In this document: in pieces, positions 196 to 62,200 of the stretch
Layout: each line of letters starts with the position of its first letter
Position numbering within the stretch: position 1 is the stretch's first letter
Source of the DNA: Lytechinus pictus
Taxonomy: Eukaryota
Direction: 5' to 3'
Assembly (NCBI RefSeq): GCF_037042905.1
Contig: NW_026974141.1
Span: 2,294,001 to 2,358,000 of the forward strand
DNA length: 64,000 nucleotides
The notes under the pieces: model-generated
Database searches by the model: none
What the model was told of the DNA's origin: nothing
Seen by the model: the letters and a program-made list of their open reading frames with translations, nothing else
Program-made: the position numbers and the translations under genes

Positions 196-3100
196 CATGG
201 TATAATCCTCTTAAGCCTTCTGCCCTGGTGGTCTTTATGAAACAATCTAACCTGAAAGATTGGAAGATTAAATTGGGATTCTTTGTGAATTAAATGAAAA
301 AAACTTCGGGGTACACCACATTTATACACAATAAAAGCTAACATTACCAATTTTCAGAATCACCATGATCTAGAGTAGATATTAAAATCTTACTGTGATA
401 TAGTTCCTACATTACAGACATGGATATGCATGCAAAATCTTTCAGCATGCAATTTTTCTACATTTGTCAACTCAAATTCTGAAATTAAACCAGGCAAGAT
501 TGTTGTGTAATCCATCTCATTATCTTAATATTTTTATTTTAATAATTTATCTTTTTAGTTTATTTAAAGAGGATGAAACATCATAATCACAACCTACATG
601 TAGGATATATGATGCAAGTTCAACACATTTTCACACAAAAAAATGTAAACACAACTTGTACACACTACACTTTTTTAATAGATGCATTCATGGCAAATTT
701 TGCTTGTGCCTCAGAAATAATGTTTGAAACATTTCAAGGAAAATCTTTTTATTCAACTTTCATTCATTCCAAATTACATTTTGAATTGAGCCAAATTACA
801 AACTGGTTCTTTTGCAACTTTAATATACATCCATTACTTTTTCTATTCGGGGCAAATATCCCTTGATTTTTCATTATTTCATTTTGTTGCTCAACGGTCC
901 CAGATACCATATTCTCATAATACTTACAAGTTGTTGTAGATGCGTTTTCCATCAATAACTTGTTGATTTTGAAGCCTAGTCTTGACCAAGTCAATGGGGA
1001 AGGTACAAGTCACACCGACTACACCCGCTACACAACCATTGATTACCTTAGCAGGAAGACTGTAGGAAGGAAAAAAATAAAAGGCCCTGGGATAAAGACT
1101 ACATGTAGATCTTACAGGGTTGAACATGTCAAATTGATTGGCAATATACAATGTACATGTAGCCAGAGATTATACTTTTTTATTTGATTTATTAAATTCC
1201 AAAATTGCATGCAAACATTAGAAATCATTCTATGGGAATGTGAGTGAAGTGAATTTGGTTTTAAATCTTCTAATTACAGTTTGAAGTATACAGTACTTCA
1301 TTTCTTTGGTGCTCCCTAGACCGCTGTAAATCCATAACAGTTATCCCAGCAAAAACAGTTCACTGATCCAGTTTACCTCCCAAATCCTCTTCTAATACCC
1401 CTTTCATAAACCCATCCTCCAATTAGCCGCCTAAGAGTAATGCGGATAATTCAATAAAAATTGCGTTTACAAACTCCGAAAATAATCCGCACTATTTTTA
1501 CGAGCGCCCGTCCTGAAAAAGGCGGATAATCGTTATGGCAACTGCACACACCCCCTCCGATGGGGTTGTGTTGGAAAAGGGTGACCTTGTGACCGCACCA
1601 TGGCAATTATCCGCATTATTTGGAAATGCGTTCATAAAGTCAATATCTGGTCCCGAGGCCGATATTATGCGAATAATTGCAGCATCAAAATAATGCGGAT
1701 AACTCTGGTCCTCCTCCGATTTTACGACCAAATTATGCTGCTATTAGCCGCATGATTGGGTTTATGAAAGGGGTATAACCCCTCCATACATTGTAGAAGT
1801 TCACATTTTACCATCATCACGAAAATAAAGTTGACCGTTGATTTCATGTTCAAACTAACTGAAAAAATGCAAAATTTCTACATATTACACGTGGGCATGC
1901 AGTTTGATCGGGGAGATTAACACGTCACACTATTACATGTAGAAGCATTAGATTGCAAATAAGGCCACATTCACCGCATAAACAAATACTGGGGAAACAT
2001 TTATTAGCAAGAAGGTTTCAAACATTGACGTCACACATGTACGACCGCATTTAACCTTACATGTATTTCTCTTCTTCAAAATAAATACTTGATCTGATTC
2101 TGAACATTTGTACAGTACTTTCATTGTGAACTAATACAATATCCCCTAGACATCCCTCCCCCTTCTTTAAATGTTCAATGAATCAATGTCAGTGTCGTCT
2201 GAAATAAAAGACAGTCTACGTCATTCTCCCAACTGCAATGCAATGCCGTGACAACCTCTTGATATTCAAGTCCATGCTTTCTAATTCATTATTTCAATAT
2301 ACACTGTAGGGTATTTATTATGCATGCCTACAGTATTTCTCGAGGAAGAAACATAGAGAAGCATACAGCAGGTACAACTGAATGAGTGGGTGATGTATAT
2401 TTAAAATTAACATTTTTAAGACAACCAAAAAAATAATAAAATACAAACTTACATAAAGTGTACAGTATAAAGAAATTGAACATGCGCAAAAATGTATATT
2501 TTCTATTAAAATATACATATTTAAAAAAAAACTTGAGTACATAAAAGGGACCATAAACTGTAAGAACTGTCAATTTTCTTCTGCCCTAATTACACATACA
2601 GTGCGTCCCACAAAAAGGAAACCTGTTTTCAGAGATTCAGTAGATTTCACAATTATTAAATATGTTTTTACTACAATAAATTTTCTCATCTCTCATTTAA
2701 AACCATGAGCTTTAGCAAATTGTTCACGCATGGCAGATTACAAATAACAAATACCGAGGCATATCAGAAACGATTTGTGCAGAAATTCACTTGTAAACCT
2801 GAATCTGTTCTCATTTCAGAGATCAGTGAGAGAATCTTAACAAAGAATACAAAGAAATGCTAATGAGCCAATCGTCGAATAAGCATGTTCGTCGTATCAC
2901 GAACCGATCTTGTCCAATTTTTCTGCGCAACCTGGTTTTGACATTAAAATTTCAAATTCATTTTGCTCATTAATAAATGCATGAAGTGTTCGTCACATAT
3001 TACATGTATATATGTAGGTATCAAAATAAAGAGGAATTGATTTATATGATTATGTAAATTAGATATCACAATTCATTTGCCTTTGTAAAAAAAAACCATG

Positions 3101-8665: not shown

Positions 8666-11160
8666 GGGGGGCGATCGCCCACCAATGAAAATATCTATCA
8701 TTGCAATTTTTGTTAAGGTAGGGCCTACTACGCAGGAATTTCATCATATAGGCATAGAGATCTTAGCTGCCGATGAATAAAGAAGAAAATGGCTAACCCC
8801 ATTTTCCATAGGCTGATCCAGTTGAGTTAGGTTATATGTATATATCTCTAAATCAATTCTAACAAACTACTTTTAAAACCCTTTCCATGAAAGTTGATCA
8901 AAAATTTCGGCTCGAGGTTAAAAAAAAATAGATTAACCCATGCATCCTTTAATTATTCATACTATATAAAGTGCTTAAAATGTCAACTTTCAGACCTTTT
9001 AAAGATCAAGTCCACCCAGAAAATCGTTGATTTGAAACGATTGAGAAAAATCAAACAAGCATAACGCTGAAATTTTCATCAAAATCGGATGAAAAAGAAG
9101 AAAGTTATGAAAATTTTAAGTTTCGCTTATTTTTCACAAGATAATTATATGCAAATGAGAGTGTCGATGATGTCCCTCACTCACTATTTCTTTTGTTTTT
9201 TTATTGCTTGAATTATACAATATTTCAATGTTTACAGATTTGACAATAAGGACCAAGTTTACTCAACCATAAACTGTTAAAATAATGGTGATTCCACATG
9301 TTCAGGGTGGAATAAATTTTTGTTTCATTTGACAATGAGAAGAAAATTATAATTTTTAATATTTCATATCAAATACAAAAGAAACATTGAGTGAGTGACA
9401 TCATCAGTCTGCTCATTTGCATACCAACCAGGATGTGCGTAACTGTTTAAATTTGTGAAATAAGCGAAACTTTAAAATGTCATTACTTTTGATGAAAATC
9501 TTCAGTCAGGGACGGATCCAGCCTTTGCCAATAGGGGGGCTGGATTTTATTTCAGCCACATTTTCCCCGATCGGCCCCTCGATGTTGATTTTTGTTTGTT
9601 TCTTAGAAGGGGTAGTCCTAAAAGCCACATAAGCTTTTATCTTATAAATCAACATAAATATATAATAATCTCATAAGCCTTTTAAAAAAAGTGCAAGCGC
9701 GAAGCTATTTTTTAAATTATTTTTCATGTCATATATTATGTCCAAAAATTTAAACATTCTGGGCAATGTTTGTGATCCTAAACGAGATGTGTATCCAACT
9801 AAATAATTAATATACGTTTTGATGTGATAAAAAAAAAGGATCTGTTAACAGCTGCGTGCAGTTAGCCATGAAGAAGTTACATAATTATTTTAACAATCAA
9901 ATTTAACAATCAAATAATAAGGGGGGCGATCGCCCACCAATGAAAATATCTATCATTGCAATTTTTGTTAAGGTAGGGCCTACTACGCAGGAATTTCATC
10001 ATATAGGCATAGAGATCTTAGCTGCCGATGAATAAAGAAGAAAATGGCTAACCCCATTTTCCATAGGCTGATCCAGTTGAGTTAGGTTATATGTATATAT
10101 CTCTAAATCAATTCTAACAAACTACTTTTAAAACCCTTTCCATGAAAGTTGATCAAAAATTTCGGCTCGAGGTTAAAAAAAAATAGATTAACCCATGCAT
10201 CCTTTAATTATTCATACTATATAAAGTGCTTAAAATGTCAACTTTCAGACCTTTTAAAGATCAAGTCCACCCAGAAAATCGTTGATTTGAAACGATTGAG
10301 AAAAATCAAACAAGCATAACGCTGAAATTTTCATCAAAATCGGATGAAAAAGAAGAAAGTTATGAAAATTTTAAGTTTCGCTTATTTTTCACAAGATAAT
10401 TATATGCAAATGAGAGTGTCGATGATGTCCCTCACTCACTATTTCTTTTGTTTTTTTATTGCTTGAATTATACAATATTTCAATGTTTACAGATTTGACA
10501 ATAAGGACCAAGTTTACTCAACCATAAACTGTTAAAATAATGGTGATTCCACATGTTCAGGGTGGAATAAATTTTTGTTTCATTTGACAATGAGAAGAAA
10601 ATTATAATTTTTAATATTTCATATCAAATACAAAAGAAACATTGAGTGAGTGACATCATCAGTCTGCTCATTTGCATACCAACCAGGATGTGCGTAACTG
10701 TTTAAATTTGTGAAATAAGCGAAACTTTAAAATGTCATTACTTTTGATGAAAATCTTCAGTCAGGGACGGATCCAGCCTTTGCCAATAGGGGGGCTGGAT
10801 TTTATTTCAGCCACATTTTCCCCGATCGGCCCCTCGATGTTGATTTTTGTTTGTTTCTTAGAAGGGGTAGTCCTAAAAGCCACATAAGCTTTTATCTTAT
10901 AAATCAACATAAATATATAATAATCTCATAAGCCTTTTAAAAAAAGTGCAAGCGCGAAGCTATTTTTTAAATTATTTTTCATGTCATATATTATGTCCAA
11001 AAATTTAAACATTCTGGGCAATGTTTGTGATCCTAAACGAGATGTGTATCCAACTAAATAATTAATATACGTTTTGATGTGATAAAAAAAAAGGATCTGT
11101 TAACAGCTGCGTGCAGTTAGCCATGAAGAAGTTACATAATTCTTTTAACAATCAAATAAT
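8666..11160. repeat. Near-identical 1255-bp tandem duplication
   Basis: 8666-~9900 is repeated at 9921-~11160 with a constant 1255-bp offset at three checked anchors (gcgatcgccc 8671/9926; gatcaagtcc 9004/10259; cagtcaggga 9503/10758). Confidence 0.95.
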
Positions 11161-39400: not shown

Positions 39401-42400
39401 TTTTTCTAGATTGGTATCTATATCAAATGCGAAGACATTTCACACATGTATATTGAACAAATATGTACGACCACCAGAGGAGGTGGTTGGAACTATAGTT
39501 CCTGAAGTGACGCTGGAATGCCACTATTTTCCTGAGGGGCACAGCCCGATGGAAAATGGTCGCATTCGTATCACTGAGGGGATCATAGTTTCACCAAACC
39601 TCTGATTGAAGGCCGTAAATATTTGATTTACATCCGTCATCAGAATTAAATACATCAGATAGGAATGTAGATATAACTGAATGAATAGTAATCTTTGAGA
39701 GAGAATTCATCAATTCTTTTTATTAGCTTTGGTGAGGCCTTTGGCTTGATCACATACGTGCATTGTACATGCATATGAGTTTGAGTTAAGCCCCGCCCAC
39801 CCGTAAATAGTTTTTGAACTATTTACGTCTGACGTCACGGCTCAGGTACTTTTCCCGGGTTGTGACGTCAGATGCCGGGATTTATGGCATTTTTGTCAAT
39901 TTCGTGACATTGGCTGGAACTATCTTTGGTCACATGACAGGGTTTAGACTAATCATCAGTCTTGATTATTATTATGACGGATATAATATTTTATAACCAA
40001 ATGAGCTATAGAAAGAGGACTACCTTGTATCCCAATGCTTTGAGTTCAGCTGGGTTGCATGGGAAAAGATCAAGGTATCTATATCTGTCAACCAAGAGGC
40101 TCGTCTCGCGATCTTTGTAATCTGTCTTGAAGATGGTCTGCCGTCTCTTCTCCACCTTGATAATACTCGCTAGATCTCCCGATGTCGACTCAAAATCTTC
40201 AAATCGTAACCAGATCTCTCTGTGTAGAAATGATAAAAGAGTTTGAATGTTTCACAAAGACTGGCTTTTCCTTTCAATTAAAAAGAAATAAAATATATAA
40301 CTTCTGAAGGTTTCCATGGCGAAGAAGAATAGTGTAGTAGGTTTCACGGTACACCATGTATCTTTCTTGGGCAGATGTTGGTCCTGAAAAGGACCACCCA
40401 ATCTCGACGTTTCTTCGACAAGTGTGTTCTTTCGCTGATGTGGTTTACGGTACACCATGTGAAGTGTTATAGAAACAGTGGATAGGAGAAGAGAAGAAAT
40501 GGATAGGCGAGAAAGTGGAGATTTGAGAGTAGAGTATTCTTTCTTGAAAAGTAGTCCTGAAAAGGACTGTAAACCAGGAAAGATTGATGAGTTGAGAACA
40601 GCTTGAGTAGTAGAGCTAGTGAGGAGATGCTGGCTTGAGTCGGCGAGTAGAGATGATGAGTAGTAGAGAGACTCGACGTTTCGGGCAGGTTGACTGTCCG
40701 TCTTCAGGAGACGGACACTCCTGAAGACGGACAGTCAACCTGCCCGAAACGTCGAGTCTCTCTACTACTCATCATCTCTACTCGCCGACTCAAGCCAGCA
40801 TCTCCTCACTAGCTCTACTACTCAAGCTGTTCTCAACTCATCAATCTTTCCTGGTTTACAGTCCTTTTCAGGACTACTTTTCAAGAAAGAATACTCTACT
40901 CTCAAATCTCCACTTTCTCGCCTATCCATTTCTTCTCTTCTCCTATCCAATGTTTCTATAACACTTCACATGGTGTACCGTAAACCACATCAGCGATTGT
41001 ACATACCACCATGCAAACCTTCAAACAACATCCAAGTGTGTTCTTGTCGTCCTCAGGAGAATGAGCAAAGTTTGTAGAAGCAGGCCTTATATACTCTGTC
41101 GAAGTGCTGTATGCACGGTATCTTGCAGGGTACATGTCTCTGATTGGCTAGATTGGTCACATGACATCCACATATGCGGACGTGGGTGACAACACACAAA
41201 TTGGGCGCGCAAAACCAGCGACGACCGGAAATGCTGTCAGTTATCATTCCTGCTAGGATTAGCATGAATGACAATGGCAGTGCTCACACGTGTGTGGAAC
41301 ATCCGGGTAGGCTAATTAGGCAAATTAGCCTCTTTGTCTAGAACGGTAAGCCAGATATTGCCGAGTTGGAGGCCGCTGTCTTGAGGAACAGTGTTATGTT
41401 CCTCAATCTCCAACGCTTCTCTGACTCTCCGCTGATGCCAGTAGGGGACACGGGTGACCAGTCTACTCTCATCCCAAAGAATCCGGTGATCATGCGTATG
41501 GGCATGATCGATGATTGCAGATTTTTCCCTCTCGTCTCTCCTACCATGGGCCTTGTGTTCCTTAATCCGAGTGTTGAAGGAACGACCCGTCTCTCCGATG
41601 TAAACTTTACCGCATTCACAAGGAATTTGGTAAACTCCAGGGAGGTCCTTGGAGTTGCGCTTGTCCTTATGGGTAGTGAGGGCAGATTGAAGCTTATTTG
41701 AGGAACTATGACGAACCTCAATGTCGGCTTCTCTCAAAATCCTCTGAATTTTGTGAGAGGCTGCTCCCAGATATGGAAGAACGACTCTCGCCTTGGGTTG
41801 TCCTACATGAGGGTTCCGCGAGGGGGGAAGCTCAGTGCAGATCTTATGTGAGGGGTAGTTGTTACATTTCAAAACACGTTTGATATGCTCAAGCTCACCT
41901 CTCAGGTGGATCTGGTCACTAACCTCATGGGCTCGTTTGACTAATGTCTTGTTGATGGATCTCAGCACTGATGGGTGGTGGAATGAACGATAGTTCAAGT
42001 ACCGATCAGTGTGAGTAGGTTTCCGATAAACCTGATGGGATAGGGATCCCTGTGCCATCCTCGTAATCTTTGTATCAAGAAAGGGGATAGACCCCGGGGG
42101 GGGCACTCAGTATATAATGCATAGTGGGTATGTGCCGCGGAGGGGACCCCCATTTTTACACTCAAATTTCCGTTCCGAGGCATAGCATTTTTGTCTTATT
42201 GAGAAAAAGAACAAAGAAAGCCGCTCCAGAGCATAGCACTTTCTTCTTCTCGAGAAAAAAGAAAAAAAAAATCCGCTCCAGGGCTTTGCATATTTTCCGT
42301 TACGCCGTTCCGGTCGCAATTTTGGTGAAAAGCGGCCGCAGCTCGCTGTCCGACCATCGCCTCTGCGCTAGCGCGCCCGTCAGTCGTGCCGCCGAGCTAG

Positions 42401-45400
42401 CTGCAAATACGTTCCATAGGGATGCATACGCACTCGCACGCAGGCGACCCGTTCCAAGGACCCCCGTTTTCACAAACATTTGTAGTTCCGAAGCCCGTTC
42501 CGAGGACCCTCCTTTTTACAATGAGCCCGCTCCAAGGCCCCCGTTTTTTGTCTCGCCCGCGGCACACCCCTACCACTTTTTTGGTCGAGTGCCCCCCCCG
42601 GGGGATAGACCCTTCATTCTCCATTTCCATGGTGAACTTGATACACTCGTGTTGAGAGTTGAGGTGCTGTAAGAAATTGCTAGTTTCCTCAGCACTGTGT
42701 TGCCAAACCACAAAAGTGTCGTCCACATATCTAAGCCACACTTTGGGTTTGTGGGTTGCTGACTGGAGAGCCGTCTCCTCGAAATGTTCCATGAACATGT
42801 TGGCTACCACTGGGGACAGGGGAGACCCCATGGCAGCCCCTTCCGTTTGCCTGTAGAATGTGTCTCTCCATCTGAAAGAGGTGGAATTGAGGCACATCTC
42901 AAGCAGGTCATGGATCTCTAGAGGGGACAACTGTGTCCTGTCAGGGAGAGCTCTGTCAAATTTCAATCTCTCAAGGATGATGGCGCAAGCATCCTTAACT
43001 GGTACACTTGTGAACAATGACTCAACATCAAAGCTGATGAGGAGGTCATTGTTAGAGACGTTCATCTGACAGATCTGCTCAACGAAATGTTTAGAGTTTC
43101 TCACGTGATGCACGCCCTGACCAACAAGAGGCTGTAAGATGTTAGTCAAATGCTGAGCCAGTGCGTATGTGGGAGATCCTCTAGTAGACACAATAGGTCT
43201 GAGTGGAGTGTCTGGTTTATGAATCTTCGGTTGCCCAAAGATTATGGGACATAGACCAGACGAGCTCCGGAGTTGTTGGTAAAGGGGTCTAGACAAGACA
43301 TCCTTCCTCTGGAGAGAGAGGAGCTAAATAAAATATAATTTGTAAACAATTTTTTTTTTGCATTACTCCTATGTGTTTAAGATCGCATGCTCAATCTGTA
43401 ATGGAACCAGTAGGATTCGAACCTGCCATCTACTGCTTTCCGGGCAGCGACTTAACCACCAGGCTATTCTGGTTCACAGCTAAATCACGATGAACTGGAA
43501 TTCAAATACCCTCGATCCTCTTCTTTCTGACTCATTAATATGCAAATGCAGTCCACCGTGGACAATAGATGGTAAATAAATAAAGAGGCTTTAATAGGAG
43601 TAAATTATAATTTGTGAACAAATTTTTTCGGCATTACTCCTATGTGTTTAAGATCGCATGCTCGATCTGTAATGAAAATCATAAGTCAGAAAAAATTATT
43701 TAAAAAAAATTATAATTTCCTCCTATTAAAGCCTTTTTATTTATTTACTAAATAAAATACAGATTCTCACAAATTCGATAGGTGGTTTGTATGGCGTTTC
43801 ATCATATTACTTCATCTGACAACTCTCCTTGATTATGATTGACTGAGAGGTACAGGTATCTGACTGTCTCTATGGTAATTATCAGGGTCCCGTAACACAA
43901 AGGATATCGATTAATTGTACACTTGACTTTCACCTTTGATCGTACATTGTAGTCAATGCAATCAATCATAGAAAGATGTTGTACGATCTTTGCTAAGCTG
44001 ACACGGGCCACAGAATAACAAATACTATGTCAAATAAAACATCCAACAAGTCCTTTCATAAAACACTCCCCTGCTATTGCTATGCAACAGATAACCAGAT
44101 AAGATCATTCAGCACTTAAGTAAACAACATTTAAGCACAGGATAAGTAGTTCATTGAATTATTCCTGATACAAGCCAAATGCAAAAAAATATACATTTTC
44201 ATGTTTACAAATACAATAACCATATTTAGTGACTTGCACTATCTGTCAAACCCAAACAAACACATTTTCATATTGACAATGACTTAATTTTTGCTGACTT
44301 ACCCAGACTGCTCTTGAGGAAGGCTTCCCGATGTAAGAACTCTCTCAAACAGAACCCTTGTATTATTATCCTCTGGAAAATTAAAAATCAAACAGAAACG
44401 ATTCCATCAAATAATCCACCTTTCTAAATCCAATCCATAGTTCGATTCATTTTAAATTGATTCAAGATTTACTTCATCTGAACTAGAATAGAAAACTAAG
44501 GCAATCATTTAAGATAGGTCCTGGATCCATGAACCGATATGGAACTGTGAAGTTGGCATCTGGGCAATTCCTTGATGTAGGTACGTTTGATCAACTTCAA
44601 GGTTAAGTCCACCCCAGAAAACAGTTGATTTAAATAAATAGAGAAAAATCAAACATGAATAACGCTGAAAACTTAACCAAAATTGGATGTAAAATAAAAA
44701 AATTATGACATTTTAAAAGTTTCGCTTATTTTTCCCAAAACAGTTCTATGCTCAACTCAGTGATATGCAAATGAGTCGATGATGTCACTCTCTCACTATT
44801 TCTTTTGTTTTTTATTGTTTGAATTATATAATATTTCAATTTTTTACGAATTTGACAATTAGGACCTCCTTGCCTGAACCACAAAATAATGGAATTCCAC
44901 GTGTTCAGGGAGGAATGAAACTTTGTTTCACATGACAATGATGAGAAAATCAAAATATTTCATATTTCATATAATAAAATACAAAAGAAATAGTGAGTTG
45001 GTGATGTAATTGGTCCCCTCATTTGCATACCAAACTGGATGTGCATATCACTGTTTTGTGAAATTAAGCGAAACTTTAAAATGCCATAACTTTCTTATTT
45101 TACATCCGATTTTGATGAAATTTTCAGTGTTATGCTTGTTTGAATTTTCTCTTTCTATTCAAATCAGCTTTTTCTTGGGGTGGACTTGTCCTTTAATGTG
45201 GGGCAGTGGGACTTTCCTGGAATGGTTTGTTTGGTTTCCAAGGTCATATAAAAAAGTTGTAATGCTCTCAAATTATGATGGCTGAAGTGCATTTGTGAAG
45301 TGAAGTAGAGACAGGCGTACAAAAAGGTTGAATAATTCAAGGAGATTGTCCATCCATCCACTTGGCACTTACCATTGAGATGTGAAAGGTAGTCTACATA

Positions 45401-50200: not shown

Positions 50201-53200
50201 TTTTATCCTTTTTAATCTTTTTATTTTGTACTTTTTCGTTTTTTCCCTTTAAGTTTTTTTTTCCTTTTCCTTCGTTATTTTTCCTTCAATGTTTTATTCC
50301 TCTTTTTATCATTGATTATCATTCTATCTATTCCTCCTTTTTCTTTCTTGTATTCTTTCCTTTTTTATTTCTTTTCATTTTTTAAAATTTTCTTTTAAGT
50401 TCCTTTTGCTTGCTTTCTTTCGTTTACCTTTTCTTTCTTTCATTGTTTTCTGCATTGATCATTTTATTTTTTTAATTTCTGTTTCATTCTGACCCTTTTC
50501 TGTCTTTTTACTTACCTACTTACTTTACTTCTTTCTTCCTGTTTTATTCTTATTCGTAACTGCTTTCTTTACCTTTTTTCTTTAATTTCTTTCTTTCTTT
50601 ATTTTGTGCACATGTCTCGAAATAATAATCACTCATTGCGTATAAAATGCCTATTTCGCACAGTGCGCAAGAAACAGTGCACGCGCAGCGCCCATCATAT
50701 TCTCTTCACATAAGGAACGCTTTTATTGGTTAAACTGCCAATATAAAGCGCATTTTGATTGGTAATATCTTAAAAATGGGCGTGTTGAAGATAAGAAGGA
50801 GGCAGTCCTTACAGAGATAAGAACGCGTTAAGAAGATTTTCAGAATACCGATTTGCAATGATTTTAGCGTCTTCTTATCTCATTGAGATAAGAACAAAGA
50901 TAAGAACAAAGATAAGAACAAAGATAAGAACAAAGATAAGAACGTTGTCAGAATACCACCCCTGGGCTGATTCATTATGTGGGCACATCGTGGTCTAGTG
51001 GTTCTGACTCTCGCCTTTCAAACAGAGGGTCGTAGGTTCAAATCCTAGCCATGATGTGTTTTCCTTCAGCAAGAAATTTATCCTATGCTACACTCGACCC
51101 AGGTGAATGGGTACCCGGCAGGATTAATTCCTTGAACGCATGAGTGCTGAAAGGTAGCTCAAGCTAAAACCGGAGTAATAATAATAACAACAATGCGCCT
51201 CGGAATAGATTGTTTCTAGATAGATGGCGCTATACAAATGCCCATTATTATTATGTATACACCTATGTTCCTTTGTTTGATTTTGAATATTGAATACATC
51301 GGTGATTGCAAGTAAATATAGGAGCGCCTTGAGCACCTAGCAAGGTGGATACGTGCGCTTTACAAATCCTATATTATTTATTATTTAAATCATAATATGC
51401 AGTTTGGTTAATGAGCATCATAAAAACACACAATTTATAAATTAGTAATAAAACTAAAAACACAGTTGAAATACACAGAAAAAACTGGAAGGTGTTTTAC
51501 AAAGATTTAAGTATGACTTAAGTCGCACTTAAATGCCGATGCGTACATGATATGCAACGCGCGATCTTATTGATAGATACGCAGTGGTGCGCGTCCTCAT
51601 GACACGATCTGACCGATGAGGTCAAGCCTTTCATACCGTACGCAACTCGGTATTTAAGTGCGACTCTAAGTCATACTTAAATCTTTGTGAAACACCCCCG
51701 GGTCACTAAACACATACCCCTTTCTCTGTGAATATCCTACTAGCGCTTTCCAAATAGAGAGCAAACTCATACCATACATCAGGGTGATGTCCAAGACACA
51801 GGAGACACTGCTCAAAGGCAAACATTACTGGAAAGAACAAAACAAAATTAAAACTTATCAAGAATCAATCGAGGAATTACATGTAAATTTTGATTACTAT
51901 GTTAGCAATTTCCAAAGATTTGCAATTAAATAAGAACCTTTAATCAGTTCTTACATGTATATGTATCTTTGTTAATAAGTCAGACATTAGACTTTGCAAT
52001 ATAATAAGGTATAAGGGTTCAATGGATAAGTGTCCATACTCAAACACTGTCAATGGTTTTGAAACCACTGTAATAATAATACTACAAACTAATTTCAAGT
52101 GTATGAGAAAAGCGCTATTGTAAACTAAAAAGGGTTGCTATGAAAACTCACGTACAACTCATTTCAAGTTTCAAAAGTAAAACTATCATTCCCTATTGAA
52201 ATTCTGTTTTTTATAAAATAAAAAAGTACAAATAATGTAGAGAAAATGAATTTCAAACATTGTGTTCATTAATTTCTAACAGGTCAATAATAACCTTAAG
52301 GCTACAAGGTTCCCATCTGAGAAACATTCATAAATTTTAACCACTATGTAAAAAGTCTAGTTTATTCATAATTTAAAAATGCTCTAAAATATCTACTAAC
52401 CTCTCTTTGTAATAAGCATCTGATCCTCTGTCCTAAGTGGATTCTGTTTCTCCCAATTCACATATTTCTTCCAGAGTTCTATCTGCCTTGCCTCTTCAGC
52501 TGTACCGGTTGGAGGAACGGATGGGTTGTTCCGATTGAGACCCTTTGTGATAGCTTCATACTCCTATAAGGATAATTATTTCAATTTCACTTTAATTCAA
52601 TATATTTCAATACAATTGAATTTCAATTCAATTGCAACTGCATCTTCAGCTGTACCCGTTGGGGGAACTGATGGGTTGTTTCGGTTGAGACCCTTTGTGA
52701 TAGCTTCATACTCCTGTGAGAATAAAGATTTCAATTCTATTCATTTCATTTCAATTTAATTCAATTCATTTCAATTCGATTGTAAGGGCCTATTCAGCTA
52801 CGCAATAAATGGGTTGTTTCAGTTGAGACCCTTTGTGATAGCTTCATACTCCTGTGAGAAGAATAAGGATTCCAATTCACTTCATTTCAATTCAATTGTA
52901 ATTGCCTCTTTAGCTGTACTGGTTGGAAGAACAGATGGTTTGTTTCGGTTGAGACCCTTTGTGATAGCTTCATACTCCTAAGAGGATAATTACTTTAATT
53001 AATTCAATTTCAATTCAATTCAATATATTTCAATACAATTTAATTTCCATTCAATTGCAATTGCATCTTCAGCTGTACCCATTGGGGGAACTGATGGGTT
53101 GTTTCGGTTGAGACCCTTTGTGATAGCTTCATACTCCTGTGAGAAGAAGAATTATTTCAATTAATTCAATTTCAATTTAATTCAATATATTTCAATACAA

Positions 53201-56200
53201 TTAAATTTCAATTCAATTGCAACTGCATCTTCAGCTGTACCCATTGGGGGAACTGATGGGTTGTTCCGATTGAGACCCTTTGTGATAGCTTCATACTCCT
53301 GTGAGAAGAAGAATTATTTCAATTCAATTTTTTTCATTTCATTTTAATTCAATTCATTTCGATTGTATTGTAAGGGCCAATTCAGCTGTACAATATATGG
53401 GTTGTTTCAGTTGAAAACCTTTGTGATGGCTTCATACTTCTGTGAGAAGAATAAGGATTTCAATTCTCTTCGTTTCATTTTAATGTAATTCAATTCATTT
53501 CAATTCAATTGTAATTGCCTCTTCAGCTGTCCTGGTTGGAGGAACAGATGGGTTGTTTCAATTGAGACCCTTTGTGATACCTTCATACTCCTATGAGGAT
53601 AATAATCATTTCAATTAATTCCATTTCAATTTAATGAAATATATTTCAATACAATTGAATTTCAATTCAATTGCAACTGCATCTTTAGCTGTACCCATTG
53701 GGGGAACTGATGGATTGTTTCGGTTGAGACCCTTTGTGATAGCTTCATACTCCTGTGAGAAGAAGAATTATTTCAATTCAATTTTTTTCATTTCATTTTA
53801 ATCCAATTCATTTCAATTGTATTGTAAGGGCTTATTCAGCTGTACAACAGATGGGTTGTTTCAGTTGAGACCCTTTGTGATAGCTTCATACTCCTGTGAG
53901 AAGAATAAGGATTTCAATTCTCTTCATTTCATTTCATTTTAATTCATTTCAATTCAATTGTAAGGGCCTATTCGGCTGTACAATATATGGGTTGTTTCAG
54001 TTGAGACCCTTTATGATAGCTTCATACTCCTGTGAGAATAAGGATTTCAATTCTATTCATTTCATTTCAATTTAATTCAATTCATTTCAATTCGATTGTA
54101 ATTGCCTATTAAGCTGTACTGGTTGGAAGAACAGATGGTTTGTTTCTGTATATAGCTTCATACATGTACTCCTGTGAGAAGAATAAGGATTTTAATTTAG
54201 CAAATTCAAATACAAATTTCAAATTCAACTCAATTCAATCACATTCAAGTCTACTCAATTCAATTCAGATAAGTTGAATTAAATTCAACTCAGTTCAATC
54301 CAAGTAAAGTTCAGTAATTCATTTTTATGCTTTTCAATTTCATTCACTTCAAATTAATTCATTGCAATTCAATCCACTCAGTTCAATTCAGTTAAATCTA
54401 CATCAATGCAGGTAAAATCAAATAAATTGAAATTGATCCCATTAATTTCAATTCAATGGGGGAAACAATGCCATTATACAATTCAATATAATCAATTAAA
54501 ATTACATCAATTCTTTTTTATAATCACTAATTTGACTTACCTTGGCAACTCTCCTGGCATTCATGTAATCTCTGCTTCTATCTTCAATCATCTTTTTTGC
54601 TATCATCACATTGATTCCCTGTTTGGAGAAAATATTTAGAAAAAAGTTGACCTCAAGCATTCAAAGATGTACTCAAGGCTGAAAATCACATTACTTGAAA
54701 AAGTTTTTTTTTTAAACATACCGGCAAACCAATGACAATTTGATCATATCGGATGGGGAAAAAAGCTACATAATTTTTTAGGACCAATGCTAGGTTTGTC
54801 ATCCAACATAAACACCAGCGTTCAAAAATAAATTCAAATCCCCCACCATACTCACGTTTTCATAATTGTTGTAGTCTTTCCAGAGAGCCTCAATATTTGA
54901 CATGGGGTTGACGATACCTCGTTGGAATACACGTCGTACAGCAGTAATCCTCTGGTTCTCGGCATACGAACCTACAGCTTCACTGAAATGGACAGAATGA
55001 GAAATGGTCTGGTATTATAGACTCATTTACAGTCAATTATAGAATAGAAATTGCCTTGAACTAGAAACACAATACAGAGTTCATAAAGAACGTTAAGTGA
55101 GGTTTATGTTTGATTTATAAGCAATGTTTTTCGGATTATCTTAAATGGTTTTCTGCATTTGAAACTACAGCTTCACTGGTAGGGGACAGAAAGAGTAGGA
55201 AAATAGACTGGGTGTATTACAAACTCATTCTTGGCATAGTGTTTTGCCTTAGAAAAGTATTGACAGTCATCATGAAAAGTTTCAATAGCCTCTAAAAAAG
55301 AAGTGTTTTGTGCTGGGTTTATATTGTAGCATTTTTATCTTTTTAAGAGATGTTGTCCTTGATTAAGTGATGTCTTTAAAAGTAGATTGATATTAAGATT
55401 GACAGCTTAGCAATCAAAATTGTCGCGATATAGACCTTAGTTGAACAAAAATAATAATTTTCATTGGAACTTCTTCCCCTTTGGCATAAGACTTTCAATT
55501 TTCATTTTTTAATGTTTTTGTCATTCTATGGTTAATTATACATACAATTGTGTGGATTTTCTGTACACTAGTGTAAATAATTCAATTCCACAGAAGTACA
55601 TCATATAATTACATGTATGTGTAATCTACTCAATAAATTACACAACGTTTGTATTAACATGTGTATGTATTTACATGCATAACTGTAATATACATGTACT
55701 CACACTCCCTTCAAGAAGTTGATATAATCGTTCCAGATAGGAAAAGAAAAGATATCCATTCCCATCTTATCCAAGGCAAAGTCGTAAGCCTGGGCCATCT
55801 TTTCTCTGTACGATGATAGACTCCCCTTAGTCTCCTTGACATAGGCCAGGTAGCACTTCCACAGATCAATGTTCAGCACTTTCATCAAGCATCGTTGAAA
55901 CAGCTGGGGAAGGAGACCAAGTTTTTGTGCCATAGTGGATTGAATGATTATGTTCATAATGTATATTTCTATTTTATTTCTAATAGTATATTGTACTATC
56001 TTGAAGTGACACAAGCTAAGTACTCAAAAGTAGACATGTGCCCCTATCATTTACATTACACCTTACAAAAAGCCATGAAAAATTTATAAATTATTCCTTC
56101 TCACTTATCAAAATGTACATATCTACCGGTGTCTTGGCTCAGTTGGTAGAGCATCTGTCGAGAGTTCAAACCCGGCCGCATCAGACCAAAAGACGTTAAA

Positions 56201-59200
56201 AGATGGGAGTTGCTGCTACCGTTTGGCATTCAACAATTAAAGGGATAGAGCCTCGTCGATCTGGCACTGCACAGCGGCTGCCGGGCCCACGATCAATTAG
56301 GCAAAGCAAATCATCAGAGTGTGTCATTTCATGTACATTTTTAACAATAAAATATGGATTTTTTTTAAATCCTTCTCACTCTCATTCTCTCACTTCACTG
56401 CCAAAAATGGCAAGATCATGCATCCAGTCTAACCAGATGCAATATACTTGCCAATTTCGGTCGGCCATCAAAACCCTACATAGTTCAATCCAGATAACCA
56501 TCATGCAATAGCAACGCAACTCACATACATGGAAACACATCGGTAGATTCTGAAAATAGAAAACAGAGATGAAATACCTAACCTAACACTAACACTAGCC
56601 TAGAAAATGAACAAACTTGTGATATTCCTACCTTTTCAACTCTTTCGTAGTTCTTTCCTCTCATCTGTGAGTAAAATTGACATCAAAGTAGAGTGGTTCC
56701 GTCGTGAAGTAAGCCAAGAAAGATGAAGGCAATTTATGAGCAGAGATAAAGATGTACACAATTACAAATGAATATCCCCATGACAAACGTAATGTGAATG
56801 ATGAATGAAAGTTCTGAAACATACTCTTTTTTTCAATTTAATTTGTGTAATGATTTGTAAAATATAGAATTTTTTAAATAAATATGAGCTGCATAGTCCT
56901 ACATACTGTAAAAACATTTGTAGCAAGTTTTTAACATCAAGCCAGCCCTGAAAATCCATGTAAAAACAGGGATCTACATATTCTTTGAAAAAATGAGTAA
57001 AAAAAAACATAACTTGCTAAAAAAAATTGATGGTCATGATCTCAAAATAGATGAAACATATTCAGTTGGCAGCTGTTATTTTTAAAATTTTCTTTGAAAT
57101 GCTCTCTTATTTTAATCAAGATTATTTCATAAATCACTTTGTATTTGATATGGTGAGTCTGCCTTTACAATGCAAATATCCTGGGACCAGAAAATCAATG
57201 ATTTAGAAGACACTAAATAACGAATATAACACAATCCGGTAAAATAATTGATTCTACTAAATTTGCATCAATAGAGAAGGCTGGCTTATGCAGATATTTA
57301 ACTGTATTGATATTATATACATTTGTTAATTAATTGTATCAACCAAATTTGTAATAAATGGGGTGTTTCCTATATGATTTTTTATAACTGATGTGAAATA
57401 TTAATGTTGCATCTGATCAGAATAGTTAGTACACTAATAATTTTCCTGAAAATTTGGCAGAGGGTGTGCACTAATATAATTGTAACAGCTGATATACCTC
57501 CAGGGGAATCCCCTTGCAGATTTTCCTCCCTCTTTCTTTACTTTTTGGGACAATGAAATAAAAGACTCATCAAATGAACATTATTGACCAATAAAGATTG
57601 ATGTTGCATATCTGCTTACTATTTCCTGGCCCAATAGAATGCACTTGGTGAATATAAACTGTAACTTGGTCTCAAACTAGCCTAGCTTGATCCAACATTG
57701 TCTAATCAAGACTTCTTTTTTCCTTTGTCCAATTTGGTGCATTTTAGATCTGTGGTAATTCTGAATTTGTCTGACATCATACTTAAGGAGTTTGAAAAGA
57801 AACATGCATTCATTTTTTTTGAAAGAAAATGAACCTGAAGTCTTGTATTTAATTGTAAATGTTCTACTTATTGAAATGTTACTTCTTGCAATATAGTATG
57901 GTATATATTAGGTTGCTCTTGTTAAAATTGACCAATTGCAATTTTGCAAAAAAGAGTTTGCATCAATTATGAATAAGTTTCTTGCGATACACCCTTAATT
58001 TCTGACAAATTAGATTCAAGATTCATTAGACAAAATGGGAAAACTATTAGATAAAGTGACGAAACCGATCAAATGATCATAAAAAAGAGTAATAGAGTGT
58101 TAGCACAACTGGGTTGTTGAAAGGGGATGACTTTTACCAAATAACAATTGAACCAAACTGCATGAAAGTAGACTAGCCTACATGTATATCTAAGAAACTG
58201 CAACTATCGTCTTTGCTTTTTTTAAGCACAAAACGTAAGTGATACATTTGATGCAGCAAGACAACTAACACTGGCTGCAGAGCAGCGACCACCTTTACAT
58301 TCCCATCTTGGTCTAGTTGTTGTTTTCTTTTTATCAACGAAATATCAGGTGGCAGTTTTCATACGGATAAACCCACACCAAATCGTAGTCAATAAAAAGA
58401 AAATGACGACTAAAGCAAGTCGAGGGTTAAACCAGTGGCTGTTTTGCACACACTGAACTAGTCTTGCTGCATCAGACTCATCGCTTACATTATGCGTAAC
58501 AGCAAAGTTATATCAGCTGCAGCCTCCACCAAGATTATACATGTAGGCGAGAAGTGGACCAAATGGTCAAAATTCACAAAGTTTTAATCAATAGTCTGAA
58601 TCATGGTCTATGCAGATTTTTTATGCAATTACTTCTTTAGTGTGTGTGTTACAAAAGGGTCAATTAAGAATGTGCCCTTGTTTTTCACAGGGCGAAAGGG
58701 CACTAAATTCATTCTTGTTCCTATGGGTTATGAGTCAATGGTTTTAATCTGAAGAGTACGCTGTTGGTGTAGCAATAAACAAGAAAGTGGACTCAAAGCA
58801 AACAAGCATGAATTAAGCACTTCTTGGAAGAAAAAAAATAGTGCATCGATTATTGGACCCTTTTCCACACTAAAAGCATAATTACATTGTGAAATTTGCA
58901 TTTTTCATGGTTTCAAACCATCCATTCAAAGCAACATTTGTGAATTTGGGCCAAAGGGATTTAATCATGGTTTTAGACCAGCGTTGTTGGTTCAAGTGGG
59001 TATTTTAAACTTTTGAAGCTTTTAAGCAGTGGATATCAAACTACATGTAGATATATGTATGTGCAAGAAATACTTGTATTAAATATGTCTGTTTTGCAAG
59101 TGGTGTTAAAAAGTTAGTGAACCCCACCAGAAAATACACAAGTTCCTTCATGCTGAGTGTTGAATGTAGACAACACAATAACATCCAGTGAGCCCAGAGA

Positions 59201-62200
59201 AACAAACTTCATTGAATGTAATATTTTATCACCTGACTTCACAATTAAATATCTAAAAGATGGCAGAACCAGAACACTTTAAAGCAGGGCTCCACACTAA
59301 CCCTTTTTTTCTACTGATCCAACCTGTTCAAGTCGGACCAGTTAATACCCAGTTTTTATTTTTTACTGGTCCGAACCTAATATTTACTGGTCCCCCAAAA
59401 TAAAGAAAAACATGAAAAAGACTCATTTTGCAGTTTTTAGGGCTTTTATTGCCCCCCCCCCCAAAAAAAAAATGTACTAACAAACAGTACACACACAACG
59501 CAATTCATGAGAACCATTTCTCAATTTTGGAAAGCCATTTTTTAAGATACTAAAGAGGAGAAAATATCATTTATATTAGTTTGATATGTTTTTTACTGGT
59601 CATGTCAGACCAGTAAATCTGGCAATTTCTGAAAAGTAACTGGCCCGACAGCAATTTTTACTGGTGTGGGACCGTCGGACCAGTACCAGTGTCACGCGCT
59701 TTTTAAAGTATTCATTTTCAGGTGGGGTTCACTATTTACTTTTTAGTACCACTGTATATTTGGAAATGTATGTATTTTTAATCAAAGCTTGCATATGTTC
59801 CGATGATATTCTATTTTTTTTTTTTTTTTTTTAAAGAGAATTTCTAGACAATGACCTCTTGCTCCACGTAGTTCTTCCAGTAGCGTCCGGAGTTGGCAAA
59901 CGTCGTAACCACAAGCTCATATAGGGTCCTGGCTTTCTCCACTGGTTGGTTCTGAGTGTGAGACATCATGAGATAGAGAGGGGAAGAAGGAACATTGGAT
60001 GGTTGGCATACATTTCAAGGAAATAAAAGATAACTCCTTGGAGTTTAGAACTATTTGGGTTGGGGATTATATGTACACACCTGTCAAGAACTCCTTTCTA
60101 TATACCTACTGTACGAGAGAAAGAACTAGAGAGAGAAACAGACAAAGGAAGAGAGAGAGAGATAAGGAGGACAATNNNNNNNNNNNNNNNNNNNNNNNNN
60201 NNNNNNNNNNNNNNNNNNNNNNNNNNNNNNNNNNNNNNNNNNNNNNNNNNNNNNNNNNNNNNNNNNNNNNNNNNNNNNNNNNNNNNNNNNNNNNNNNNNN
60301 NNNNNNNNNNNNNNNNNNNNNNNNNNNNNNNNNNNNNNNNNNNNNNNNNNNNNNNNNNNNNNNNNNNNNNNNNNNNNNNNNNNNNNNNNNNNNNNNNNNN
60401 NNNNNNNNNNNNNNNNNNNNNNNNNNNNNNNNNNNNNNNNNNNNNNNNNNNNNNNNNNNNNNNNNNNNNNNNNNNNNNNNNNNNNNNNNNNNNNNNNNNN
60501 NNNNNNNNNNNNNNNNNNNNNNNNNNNNNNNNNNNNNNNNNNNNNNNNNNNNNNNNNNNNNNNNNNNNNNNNNNNNNNNNNNNNNNNNNNNNNNNNNNNN
60601 NNNNNNNNNNNNNNNNNNNNNNNNNNNNNNNNNNNNNNNNNNNNNNNNNNNNNNNNNNNNNNNNNNNNNNNNNNNNNNNNNNNNNNNNNNNNNNNNNNNN
60701 NNNNNNNNNNNNNNTATAGAATGGAAGCATAAGATTTTTTAGACTTATCTCTAATTACATGTACCGGTATTTTCTAGAACGAAGCTCTTGACAGAATGGA
60801 GTATTTCCATTCAACCTTAATAAGGTTTATTAAACACAACTCTGAAACCAACAACAAAACTCAATTTCCTTCTAATGGTAATATGTCATATACCCCTACC
60901 TAATGATAACATCTGCCTCTGTCTCAATTTTTACTTCAGGTGGTGTCAAACGGTAGAAAAAAGTCTGGAATATAGCTTAAAAACAAGTATCAAAACCAGA
61001 CTTTTCTTTTGTTGGATGGTATCATCAGGCAGAAATATGTGACACAGCCTTTTAGAGATGATCACATATCAATCATGATAAAATAATATGGTCTGTGCAG
61101 GATTAAGATGGCACTTATACCAATGAACCATTTCAATGAATTTATTGCAACCAAAGTTTAGCACTTTAAAGTGCATGAGCTTGCACAGTAGAATGCCAAT
61201 GATTTTATTCATCTGTTTGCTAAAATATGAAATTCAATAGTTAGAATGTGAATGCCAAATTTCTGTAATTCATATTCCAACATTCCAACGACGGAGTACG
61301 CTCTGATTGTACATGACAAAGATTATACTGCCATTAATTTTTAGTGCAATATGAAAATGGTCTTGACAGCAGCCCACAATATCCTGACACAGAACCAATT
61401 AATTGTTGATATATGACCCAGAACCATTCAGCCATGAATTTTGAAAGACACTCAACAAATGTTGAAAAATCATTAAAAATGTTTGATTTGTGTTTTATGA
61501 AATCATAAACATAATTCAAATTTAATGTAACATTATGTACATGTACATTTAAAGTCACTAAATAATGATTTTTAAAGTATGCTCGATGACACTTCATATA
61601 CATATCTTGACCAATTTAATTTTTATACTCTATTGTGACAGTGGCTTCTCATTCATGTCTGAATAGACCTTTATGTCCGACACATTGTGGAAAAATAAAA
61701 CTAAACAAATTACAACCAAAAAGTAGTAATTTATTACAGAAGATCAAATAATTCATACAAACTTAACTAAATATTCTTTACCTTTAAGTATCAATGAATA
61801 TGAACAAAACAAACCAAATGTGACAAATATTCAGATTTTTTTCCCCAAGGCATATGAAACAAATTGCTTATATTTATGAAGGACAAAGCAGCCAAATCTT
61901 GGTAAATAAGCAGTGCCAAATTTTGTTTTCACTCCTTAAAATGTTAATTGCATTTAAAGGAGACTATTCAGATGTTTTCAAAAATTATGTATCAAACGTT
62001 AAACATTTTATTGAATCATTATTTTATTCCTCTTCATTTTTCTACCATTCTTCATCTGCATCCTCCATTTAATATCTACACTGTATGTAGTTCTATCTTC
62101 TTTCTTCGCTCTGTACTTCTTCAATCTTCTTTTCTCCTCCTCTTCTTCCCCCTTAAAATGTTTGTTGTAGTCTTGTGCTTCTTCCTATATTTTCATCATC

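What the first reader, a model, noticed from the sequence alone, without database searches (positions are those of the whole stretch)
52490..54185. Higher-order array of 11 decoy 3' splice sites and exon starts upstream of a CSTF3 exon
Seen in sequence: the acceptor and first ~50-70 nt of CSTF3 exon 52401-52563 ([18 protein letters not shown]...) are reiterated 11 more times inside the preceding intron. The copies fall into three variant types ordered A-B-C-A-B-B-C-A-B-C-C-A on the plus strand, a higher-order repeat. Nearly all keep YAG|GAGTATGAAG. Several have a better-looking pyrimidine tract (ttcttcttctcacag) than the true acceptor (aattatccttatag), and the spliceosome meets them first. The copies I translated hit a premature stop: C-types read CTC AAC TGA, and copy 2 stops in the spacer. 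No good donor follows them. Established: CstF-77/Su(f) autoregulates through unproductive RNA processing in vertebrates and Drosophila. Inference: the array is either a copy-number-tunable unproductive-splicing device, or a natural test of exon definition in which 11 strong acceptors are skipped.
Basis: partly seen in the sequence, partly recalled or inferred. Interest (0 to 1): 0.75.

Follow-up and report, generated by a model that had tools for sequence, protein, structure and literature searches.

The report
Silent splice-acceptor minisatellite in CSTF3 intron
A piece of about 150 bases spanning an intron/exon border of the sea-urchin CSTF3 gene has been copied 11 extra times in a row, but the RNA evidence shows only the last, real splice site in use, so this is a tolerated repeat of a known kind ("mirage") and not a shown control device.

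Summary
There are 11 extra copies of the 3' splice site plus the first 67-77 nt of the CSTF3 exon 52401-52563 (minus strand; human CstF-77 residues 222-275). They lie in tandem inside the preceding intron as three subtypes in a roughly 450-bp higher-order repeat. All 11 keep an AG, none is followed by a usable donor, and all would give a premature stop.

The functional reading is not supported. Contigs from RNA-like runs of two coded organisms join donor 54541 to the authentic acceptor. In the run with exon depth of about 125-170, decoy-specific sequence has depth of about 0. AG retention is within the neutral expectation (P about 0.24).

The documented CstF-77 feedback uses an intronic poly(A) site, not decoy acceptors. 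Tandem repeats that straddle an intron/exon border are already described in amphioxus as "mirages", where they do not disturb splicing. Earlier notes of this scan record at least eight similar arrays elsewhere in this same genome, which those notes name as Lytechinus pictus.

The best reading is a neutral, fairly old, recombining minisatellite, with the real site chosen through its exon context. NMD-hidden decoy use or intronic polyadenylation is not excluded, because only contigs could be laid, not raw reads.

The parts
54541..54617 (-). Upstream CSTF3 exon (…[16 protein letters not shown]), donor AAG|gtaagt at 54541/54540
   Evidence: Spliced contigs in X1, X5 and X9; sequence
52564..54540 (-). 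The 1977-nt intron that holds the array; 68% A+T
   Evidence: Joint 52562/54540 in X5
54195..54520 (-). Degenerate (AATTG/GAATT)n low-complexity tract, the same material as the repeat spacers
   Evidence: TRF period 5 at 54222-54390; sequence
52487..54190 (-). Whole minisatellite: 12 units of 126-162 bp, arranged in transcript direction as [A* C C B][A C B B][A C B] plus the true A unit
54101..54190 (-). Decoy 1 (A*, degenerate edge copy), AG at 54173-54172
53963..54048 (-). Decoy 2 (C), AG at 54031-54030, TGA at codon 11
53827..53912 (-). Decoy 3 (C), AG at 53895-53894, TGA at codon 11
53676..53771 (-). Decoy 4 (B), AG at 53754-53753, frame open for 45 codons
53514..53609 (-). Decoy 5 (A), TAG| acceptor, AG at 53592-53591, TGA at codon 11
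53373..53458 (-). Decoy 6 (C), CAG|AAG, AG at 53441-53440
53222..53317 (-). Decoy 7 (B), AG at 53300-53299; its first 44 nt are identical to the true exon
53060..53155 (-). Decoy 8 (B), AG at 53138-53137
52901..52996 (-). Decoy 9 (A), TAG| acceptor, AG at 52979-52978
52785..52870 (-). Decoy 10 (C), AG at 52853-52852
52637..52732 (-). Decoy 11 (B exon part behind a C-like short pyrimidine tract, so a mosaic unit), AG at 52715-52714
52401..52563 (-). Authentic CSTF3 exon (human residues 222-275). Acceptor ttatag|GAG, donor GAG|gttagt. Only nt 1-77 belong to the repeat.

Best explanation
This is a 'mirage'-type minisatellite. A segment of about 140-160 bp, made of the last 60-85 nt of the intron (AATTG-like low-complexity DNA, pyrimidine tract and AG) plus the first 77 nt of the exon, was duplicated in tandem. 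It diverged into three monomer types and was then amplified as an A-C-B trimer by unequal exchange. It has no function of its own. The pre-mRNA is spliced from donor 54541 to the twelfth, authentic acceptor. Only that copy is continuous with the remaining 86 nt of purine-rich exon and a real 5' splice site, so only it is defined as an exon (inferred). The decoys lack a downstream donor and are ignored. Any rare use would give a transcript with a premature stop that would be expected to be degraded (inferred). Shown here: the anatomy, the higher-order repeat, the stop in every decoy, the absence of donors, the canonical junction in RNA-like contigs, and the absence of decoy-specific sequence from those contigs. 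Inferred: the exon-definition mechanism, neutrality, and origin by slippage or unequal exchange in the AATTG-rich intron.
For: Anatomy. Higher-order repeat. RNA: X5 contig 17 (2134 nt) reads 51827|52401 … 52562|54540 … 54615|54855 … 54982|55704. The X1 junction contig carries 43 nt containing AATCGG, a state found only in the true exon and decoy 7. It is continued by two contigs (52401-52549) that are true-exon alleles differing only at third codon positions. X1 depth in array bins is 0-0.7 against 125-170 on the exons; the 37.8 in bin 53217-53363 equals exactly that 43-nt piece. Decay: the decoys lost most of the three CpGs that the true exon keeps, producing the TGA stops. The pyrimidine tract is the most variable part (0.98 steps per column). 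An invariant AG is not unexpected, with 1.4 steps expected and P about 0.24. Mosaic units (a C-like tract with an A* or B exon part) show exchange between units. There is no difference in predicted accessibility between the true and decoy acceptors. Precedent: amphioxus mirages of 150-160 bp do not interfere with splicing (PMC3087553). The same architecture is noted in at least eight other genes of this genome (AI notes, not verified here).
Against: Only Logan contigs could be laid. They drop rare variants and cannot show NMD-sensitive isoforms. The run kinds are guesses ('RNA?'). Exon nt 1-29 of the copies varies about 3 times less than the rest (6 steps against 17-21 expected, P about 1e-3 to 1e-4, post hoc). 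I attribute this to exchange breakpoints, but I cannot prove that. Decoy 11 lies only 150 nt upstream, so an exon from it to the true donor would be 313 nt, and exon definition alone does not forbid it. In X9 the depth drops from about 23 to 5.6 across this intron and the intron is covered at about 5. This is unexplained.
Confidence: 0.8

Rival explanations
1. Regulated unproductive splicing. Some transcripts splice to a decoy, acquire a premature stop and are removed by NMD. This would lower CSTF3 output in proportion to copy number or CstF-77 level.
For: All 11 decoys keep YAG and most have more pyrimidine-rich tracts than the true site. All would give a premature stop. The array is shared in some form with coded organism B (X9 contig 19). 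Contigs cannot exclude rare or NMD-degraded isoforms.
Against: No decoy-specific sequence appears in X1 or X5 contigs, even though exon depth is 125-170 in X1 and 33.6 in X5. AG retention is not significant. The pyrimidine tract is the fastest-changing part. The known CstF-77 feedback uses an intronic poly(A) site, not splicing decoys. Many unrelated genes of this genome carry the same kind of array.
Confidence: 0.07
2. Intronic processing brake. The array slows removal of this intron (decoy 3' splice sites holding U2AF/U2, a detained intron), or it offers 12 weak poly(A) sites (ATTAAA followed by a U-rich tract) that sense CstF activity. This would be an urchin analogue of the vertebrate intron-3 and fly su(f) intronic poly(A) feedback.
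For: There is one ATTAAA per unit, 12 in the intron against 3.5±1.9 expected, each about 35-45 nt upstream of a pyrimidine tract. In X9, upstream exons have depth of about 23, the junction contig reads 26 nt into the intron, the intron is covered at about 5, and downstream exons reach only 5.6. The position of the feedback poly(A) site is not conserved between flies and vertebrates, so a different intron is not an argument against this.
Against: The 12 ATTAAA are copies of one unit and not independent events. There is no AATAAA. X1 and X5 show equal depth upstream and downstream of the intron. X9 also covers other introns. No poly(A)-tailed loose ends were listed in the array, although contigs cannot show ends.
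Confidence: 0.05
3. Assembly artefact: the array, or its copy number and order, is a mis-assembly of a shorter repeat.
For: Minisatellites are error-prone in assemblies. The amphioxus BflGb6 mirage was mis-assembled in the draft genome. X12 shows low-depth joints between units about one higher-order period apart (53024 to 53492 and others).
Against: All 12 units differ from each other (95% identity at most), so they cannot be collapsed or expanded copies of one read. X12 contig 8 (704 nt, 53866-54569) matches with 0 differences and X12 covers 28 of 30 bins. Organism B has related units (X9). X12 may, however, be the sample the assembly came from.
Confidence: 0.04

Closest known systems
'Mirage' minisatellites of amphioxus (Adh3, Cañestro et al. 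2002; globin BflGb6/BflGb9, Ebner et al. 2010, PMC3087553)
   Same: Tandem repeats whose unit spans an intron/exon border, with the authentic copy at the edge of the array. Units are 150-160 bp in BflGb6. Most copies keep AG. Regular splicing is unaffected. They show concerted evolution with a divergent edge copy.
   Different: A different phylum (echinoderm) and gene. This array has more copies (12 against 3-6). It is older and organised as a three-monomer higher-order repeat, and polymorphism here is only hinted at.
Other splice-acceptor minisatellites noted by this scan in the same genome (VPS51, NCAPG, DDX19, BRCA2, cubilin, Vps34, WDR11, SLC4)
   Same: Same architecture, and the follow-up notes reach the same conclusion that only the last acceptor is used (AI notes, not verified here).
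   Different: Those are described as mostly young and homogeneous. This one has three subtypes 10-31% apart and a period of about 450 bp.
Human F7 intron-7 37-bp VNTR and similar donor-side arrays (Borensztajn et al. 2006, PMC1557585)
   Same: A minisatellite whose first or last element spans an exon/intron border, giving a row of pseudo splice sites of which one is used (abstract).
   Different: In F7 the donor side is repeated and the first site is used. Here the acceptor side is repeated and the last site is used.
CstF-77 / su(f) feedback through an intronic poly(A) site (Luo et al. 2013, PMC3708835)
   Same: The same gene family, and unproductive processing inside an intron.
   Different: The mechanism is cleavage and polyadenylation in human intron 3 (short isoform of 103 aa), well upstream of residues 222-275. 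No decoy acceptors are involved, and nothing equivalent is shown here.
Duplicated 3' splice-site competition constructs (Reed and Maniatis 1986; from my own knowledge, not checked here)
   Same: With duplicated acceptors, the amount of adjacent exon sequence decides which one is used.
   Different: Those were engineered constructs with two sites. This is a natural array of 12.

Membership tests
Mirage minisatellite (tandem repeat spanning an exon/intron border) | Head-to-tail tandem repeat | tested here: met
   TRF periods of 141-162 and 454; 12 units in register
Mirage minisatellite (tandem repeat spanning an exon/intron border) | The unit contains both intronic sequence with the splice signal and exonic sequence | tested here: met
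   Each unit has a spacer, a pyrimidine tract, AG and 67-77 nt homologous to exon nt 1-77.
Mirage minisatellite (tandem repeat spanning an exon/intron border) | The authentic copy is the terminal unit, continuous with the rest of the exon | tested here: met
   Homology ends at 52487 and the exon runs on to 52401. Spliced contigs use 52563.
Mirage minisatellite (tandem repeat spanning an exon/intron border) | Does not interfere with regular splicing | tested here: met
   Canonical junction in X5, and in X1 by overlap logic. Decoy-specific depth is about 0. This is contig-level evidence only.
Mirage minisatellite (tandem repeat spanning an exon/intron border) | Length instability or polymorphism | tested here: inconclusive
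   X12 has low-depth joints about one higher-order period apart. X9 (organism B) shows a different unit order. No long reads were available.
NMD-coupled regulated unproductive splicing (poison exon or poison acceptor) | A stop-containing isoform is actually produced | tested here: not met
   No decoy-specific sequence in RNA-like contigs. Rare or degraded isoforms cannot be excluded.
NMD-coupled regulated unproductive splicing (poison exon or poison acceptor) | Splice signals conserved beyond the neutral expectation | tested here: not met
   AG has 0 steps against 1.4 expected (P about 0.24). The pyrimidine tract is the most variable region.
NMD-coupled regulated unproductive splicing (poison exon or poison acceptor) | Usage responds to the level of the encoded factor | not testable with these tools
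   Needs perturbation experiments
CstF-77 intronic poly(A) feedback | A used cleavage/polyadenylation site inside the intron | tested here: inconclusive
   There are 12 ATTAAA and no AATAAA. Contigs cannot show 3' ends. X9 shows a depth drop, but X1 and X5 do not.
Decoy exon / detained intron | The decoy has both a 3' and a 5' splice site, and the intron is retained | tested here: not met
   No donor above 4 of 6 consensus positions after any decoy. Intron coverage appears only in runs that also cover other introns.
Recursive splice site | AG immediately followed by a GTRAGT donor | tested here: not met
   The junction is YAG|GAGTAT. The nearest GT is 3 nt inside the copy (GGA|GTATGA), and using it would add 2 nt per cycle.

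The most novel reading that the evidence does not exclude
The array is not inert. Its 11 pyrimidine-tract/AG decoys, each preceded by an ATTAAA, might make this intron a slow or abortive processing step, through a detained intron, NMD-coupled decoy splicing or weak intronic polyadenylation. That would set CSTF3 output and could be tuned by gaining or losing roughly 450-bp higher-order units. It would be an echinoderm counterpart of the independently evolved intronic feedback sites of vertebrates and flies.
Probability: 0.05. Interest if true: 0.65.

Novelty: new member of a known kind. Interest (0 to 1): 0.25.

Why it matters
As it stands, this is one more example of a known and tolerated repeat type. 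Its modest value is as a natural experiment. Eleven acceptors with intact AG and richer pyrimidine tracts are met first by the spliceosome and passed over in favour of a weaker-looking site. That site differs only in what lies downstream, so the array illustrates that exon context, not acceptor strength, decides the choice. Read together with the other arrays this scan noted in the same genome, it suggests that sea urchins, like amphioxus, generate such border-spanning minisatellites often. I found no description of them in sea urchins in the paper library. They could be raw material for intron or exon gain. If decoy use or intronic polyadenylation were shown, it would be a new autoregulatory design for a core 3'-end processing factor.

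Tried and rejected
1. I tried to assign the X1 joint 53297 to 54540 and the X12 joint 53892 to 54540 to decoys. I rejected both. The 43-nt and 27-nt sides are identical in the true exon, so the placement by the tool is arbitrary.

2. I tested for selection on the AG and the pyrimidine tract. There is no signal.

3. Low variation in exon nt 1-29 is real (P about 1e-3). However, a second low-variation window lies at the exon-part/spacer junction, and mosaic units point to exchange breakpoints there. I do not take it as evidence of function.

4. I compared local RNA accessibility at the 12 acceptors. There is no useful difference, 0.58 at the true site against 0.39-0.57 at the decoys.

5. The recursive-splicing motif is absent.

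6. An Rfam scan of 50500-55500 gave only one sub-threshold chance hit, IS009 at 23.7 bits against a gathering score of 117.

7. A word search with a B-type decoy ORF, meant to fish decoy-bearing contigs from relatives, came back blank. That says nothing, given the length and word limits.

8. Cañestro et al. 2002 (PMC117041) is not held in the library, so it is cited only through PMC3087553.

9. A proper splice-site model (MaxEntScan) is not installed, so only crude features were scored.

10. The N run at 60176-60714 was left untouched.
Full report
**What is there.** On the minus strand the window carries a CSTF3 (CstF-77 / Suppressor of forked) gene.
- The translated exon 52401-52563 matches human CSTF3 residues 222-275 at E=1.4e-20 and mouse CstF-77 at 4.8e-21. 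It also matches Pfam Suf, as do other exons of the gene.
- The upstream exon ends at donor AAG|gtaagt (54541/54540). The intron runs from 54540 to 52564, 1977 nt.
- Inside this intron the last part of the intron plus the first 67-77 nt of the exon recur 11 times in tandem.
- First exon-like bases are at 54171, 54029, 53893, 53752, 53590, 53439, 53298, 53136, 52977, 52851 and 52713. The authentic copy at 52563 is the twelfth and last unit.
- The 29-nt core is absent from the rest of the window.
- Homology of the real exon to the repeat ends at 52487. The remaining 86 nt and the donor GAG|gttagt are unique.

**Higher-order structure.**
- The units are 126-162 bp and fall into three types. These differ in the pyrimidine tract, in exon nt 30-77 and in the spacer.
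- TRF gives about 75% match at period 141-162 and 87% at period 454.
- Same-type identity is 81-95% and between-type identity 69-90%.
- The 5' edge copy is the most degenerate, as is usual for arrays homogenised by unequal exchange.
- Two units are mosaics, with a C-like tract in front of an A* or a B exon part. This shows exchange between units.
- The spacers are the same AATTG-like low-complexity DNA that fills the 5' part of the intron at 54195-54520. That suggests slippage or unequal exchange in this tract as the origin (inference).

- Nine of 11 decoys keep YAG|GAGTATGAAG exactly.
- Pyrimidine content at -20..-4 is 0.59-0.76 in the decoys against 0.53 at the true acceptor.
- Every decoy would run into a stop. 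C-types and copy 5 stop at codon 11 through CGA/CGG to TGA, that is CpG decay. Copy 1 stops at codon 21. The A and B types stop at codons 32-46 in the spacer.
- No GT downstream of a decoy matches more than 4 of 6 donor consensus positions, and none has the +5 G.

**RNA evidence.** Only one read-laying run was allowed and all runs were Logan contigs.
- X5 (coded organism B; exons about 3% different from the window) has a single 2134-nt contig. It reads 55905-55704 | 54982-54855 | 54615-54540 | 52562-52401 | 51827-51717, which is the canonical junction.
- X1 (organism A) has a junction contig at depth 129 ending in 43 nt that the tool placed on decoy 7.
  - Those 43 nt are identical in the true exon, and the AATCGG they contain occurs only in these two copies.
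  - The contig stops exactly where two further contigs (52401-52549, depths 116 and 53) begin. Those are two alleles of the true exon whose listed differences are spaced in multiples of three, so they are third codon positions.
  - The bin depth of 37.8 at 53217-53363 equals 129.3 × 43/147, so nothing specific to decoy 7 is present.
  - All other array bins have depth 0-0.7 against 125-170 on the exons.
- The X12 joint to 53892 has a 27-nt side that is shared by most copies, so it is uninformative.
- At contig resolution the mRNA uses the twelfth acceptor in both organisms. Contigs drop rare variants and say nothing about NMD-sensitive products, and the run kinds are guesses.

**Is the array real and how old is it?**
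- All units differ from one another (95% identity at most).
- X12 contains a 704-nt contig (53866-54569) with no differences and covers 28 of 30 bins. X12 may, however, be the source sample of the assembly.
- X9 (organism B) has intronic contigs 93-95% identical to the array but with a different unit order, an A*-type spacer joined to a B-type unit. So the array exists in a second coded organism.
- Exon divergence between the window and organism B (about 3%) is no larger than between the two X1 alleles (about 5%), so this gives little dating power.
- The three subtypes and the tree length of about 0.84 substitutions per site among ten units indicate an old array compared with the homogeneous ones described elsewhere in this genome.

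**Tests for constraint (ten full units).**

| Region | Parsimony steps per column |
|---|---|
| Exon nt 1-29 | 0.21 |
| Exon nt 30-77 | 0.75 |
| Spacer | 0.65 |
| Pyrimidine tract | 0.98 |
| AG | 0 |

- With 1.4 steps expected on the two AG columns, an invariant AG has P of about 0.24. AG retention is therefore not evidence of selection, and the tract is the least conserved part.
- Exon nt 1-29 is significantly quiet (6 steps against 17-21 expected). The test is post hoc, and a second quiet window lies at the exon-part/spacer junction. The mosaic units place exchange breakpoints exactly in this block. I read it as a homogenisation hotspot.
- The decoys have lost most of the three CpGs that the true exon keeps.
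- Two synonymous states of segregating true-exon alleles (nt 45 A in X1, nt 51 C in X9) equal the B-type decoy state. This fits past conversion or descent from such an allele.
- Predicted local accessibility does not separate the true acceptor from the decoys.

**How it most likely works.**
- The array is a by-product of repeat expansion.
- The spliceosome pairs donor 54541 with the only acceptor that has the remaining 86 nt of purine-rich exon and a real donor downstream of it (exon definition). The decoys have no partner donor.
- This step is inferred. It is weakest for decoy 11, which is only 150 nt upstream and would give a 313-nt exon.

**Comparison with what is known.**
[quoted passage not shown] 2002, cited in PMC3087553).
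- In amphioxus globin genes they have 150-160-bp units, keep AG, vary in copy number between haplotypes and do not interfere with splicing.
- The donor-side analogue is the human F7 intron-7 VNTR (PMC1557585).
- Earlier notes of this scan list the same architecture in VPS51, NCAPG, DDX19, BRCA2, cubilin, Vps34, WDR11 and SLC4 of this same genome, which they name as Lytechinus pictus. Their follow-ups found only the last acceptor in use. These are AI notes that I did not verify.
- The scan has therefore found this kind before on other DNA of the same genome.
- CstF-77 autoregulation is real, but it works by cleavage and polyadenylation in human intron 3 (short isoform of 103 aa) and in a non-homologous fly intron (PMC3708835). 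It does not work through decoy acceptors.

**What remains open.**
- Each unit carries one ATTAAA, 12 in the intron against 3.5±1.9 expected, but these are copies of one unit and not independent events.
- In X9 the upstream exons are about four times deeper than the downstream ones, and the intron is covered. X9 also covers other introns, and X1 and X5 show no drop.
- I therefore keep a small probability, about 5% each, for NMD-coupled decoy use and for an intronic processing brake.

**Verdict.** The functional interpretation is unsupported. This is a new member of a known kind, notable only for its higher-order organisation and for the clean illustration that acceptor strength does not decide splice-site choice.

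Noticed in passing
window 51497-51705: A MITE-like element of about 210 bp with terminal inverted repeats of about 45 bp lies 12 nt downstream of the CSTF3 exon 51717-51827. In all four runs its summed contig depth is enormous (7,000-62,000 against 5-130 for the exons). There are hundreds of divergent contigs and opposite-strand joints, so this is a very abundant dispersed repeat.
   Followed up: partly
window 52401-55905 (run X9): In X9 (organism B), exons upstream of the array intron have depth of about 23 and the contig reads 26 nt past donor 54541 into the intron. The intron is covered at about 5 and the downstream exons reach only 5.6. X1 and X5 show no such drop. Unexplained; possible causes are pre-mRNA, library bias or premature termination.
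   Followed up: no
window 52596-54196, minus strand: There is exactly one ATTAAA per repeat unit, 12 in the intron with no AATAAA. Each lies about 35-45 nt upstream of the next pyrimidine tract.
   Followed up: partly
window 52519 and 52513: Synonymous variants of the real exon seen in other haplotypes (exon nt 45 C>A in X1, nt 51 T>C in X9) are the states carried by the B-type decoys. This hints at conversion between the array and the exon, or at descent of the B type from such an allele.
   Followed up: partly
window 53001-53795 (X12 joints, table 5c): Low-depth contigs join repeat units 467-785 nt apart, about one to two higher-order periods. This may be a second haplotype with a different copy number, or mapping ambiguity.
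   Followed up: no
window 41315-43323, minus strand: Two long ORFs of a retroelement (Pfam RVT_1, E=1.6e-12) sit inside a downstream CSTF3 intron, in the GC-richer stretch 40-44 kb.
   Followed up: partly
window ~8747-11099: Seven minus-strand ORFs recur with identical translations at an offset of exactly 1255 nt, so this is a two-copy direct repeat of more than 1.1 kb.
   Followed up: no
window 927-1169, minus strand: An ORF containing …[13 protein letters not shown]… looks like an exon of a mitochondrial carrier (SLC25) gene. This rests on motif recall only and was not searched.
   Followed up: no
window 55934-59846: The intron or introns upstream of the exon encoding …[18 protein letters not shown]… correspond in position to the region of human intron 3, which holds the feedback poly(A) site. 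They contain 3 AATAAA and 7 ATTAAA on the transcribed strand. Usage could not be tested.
   Followed up: no
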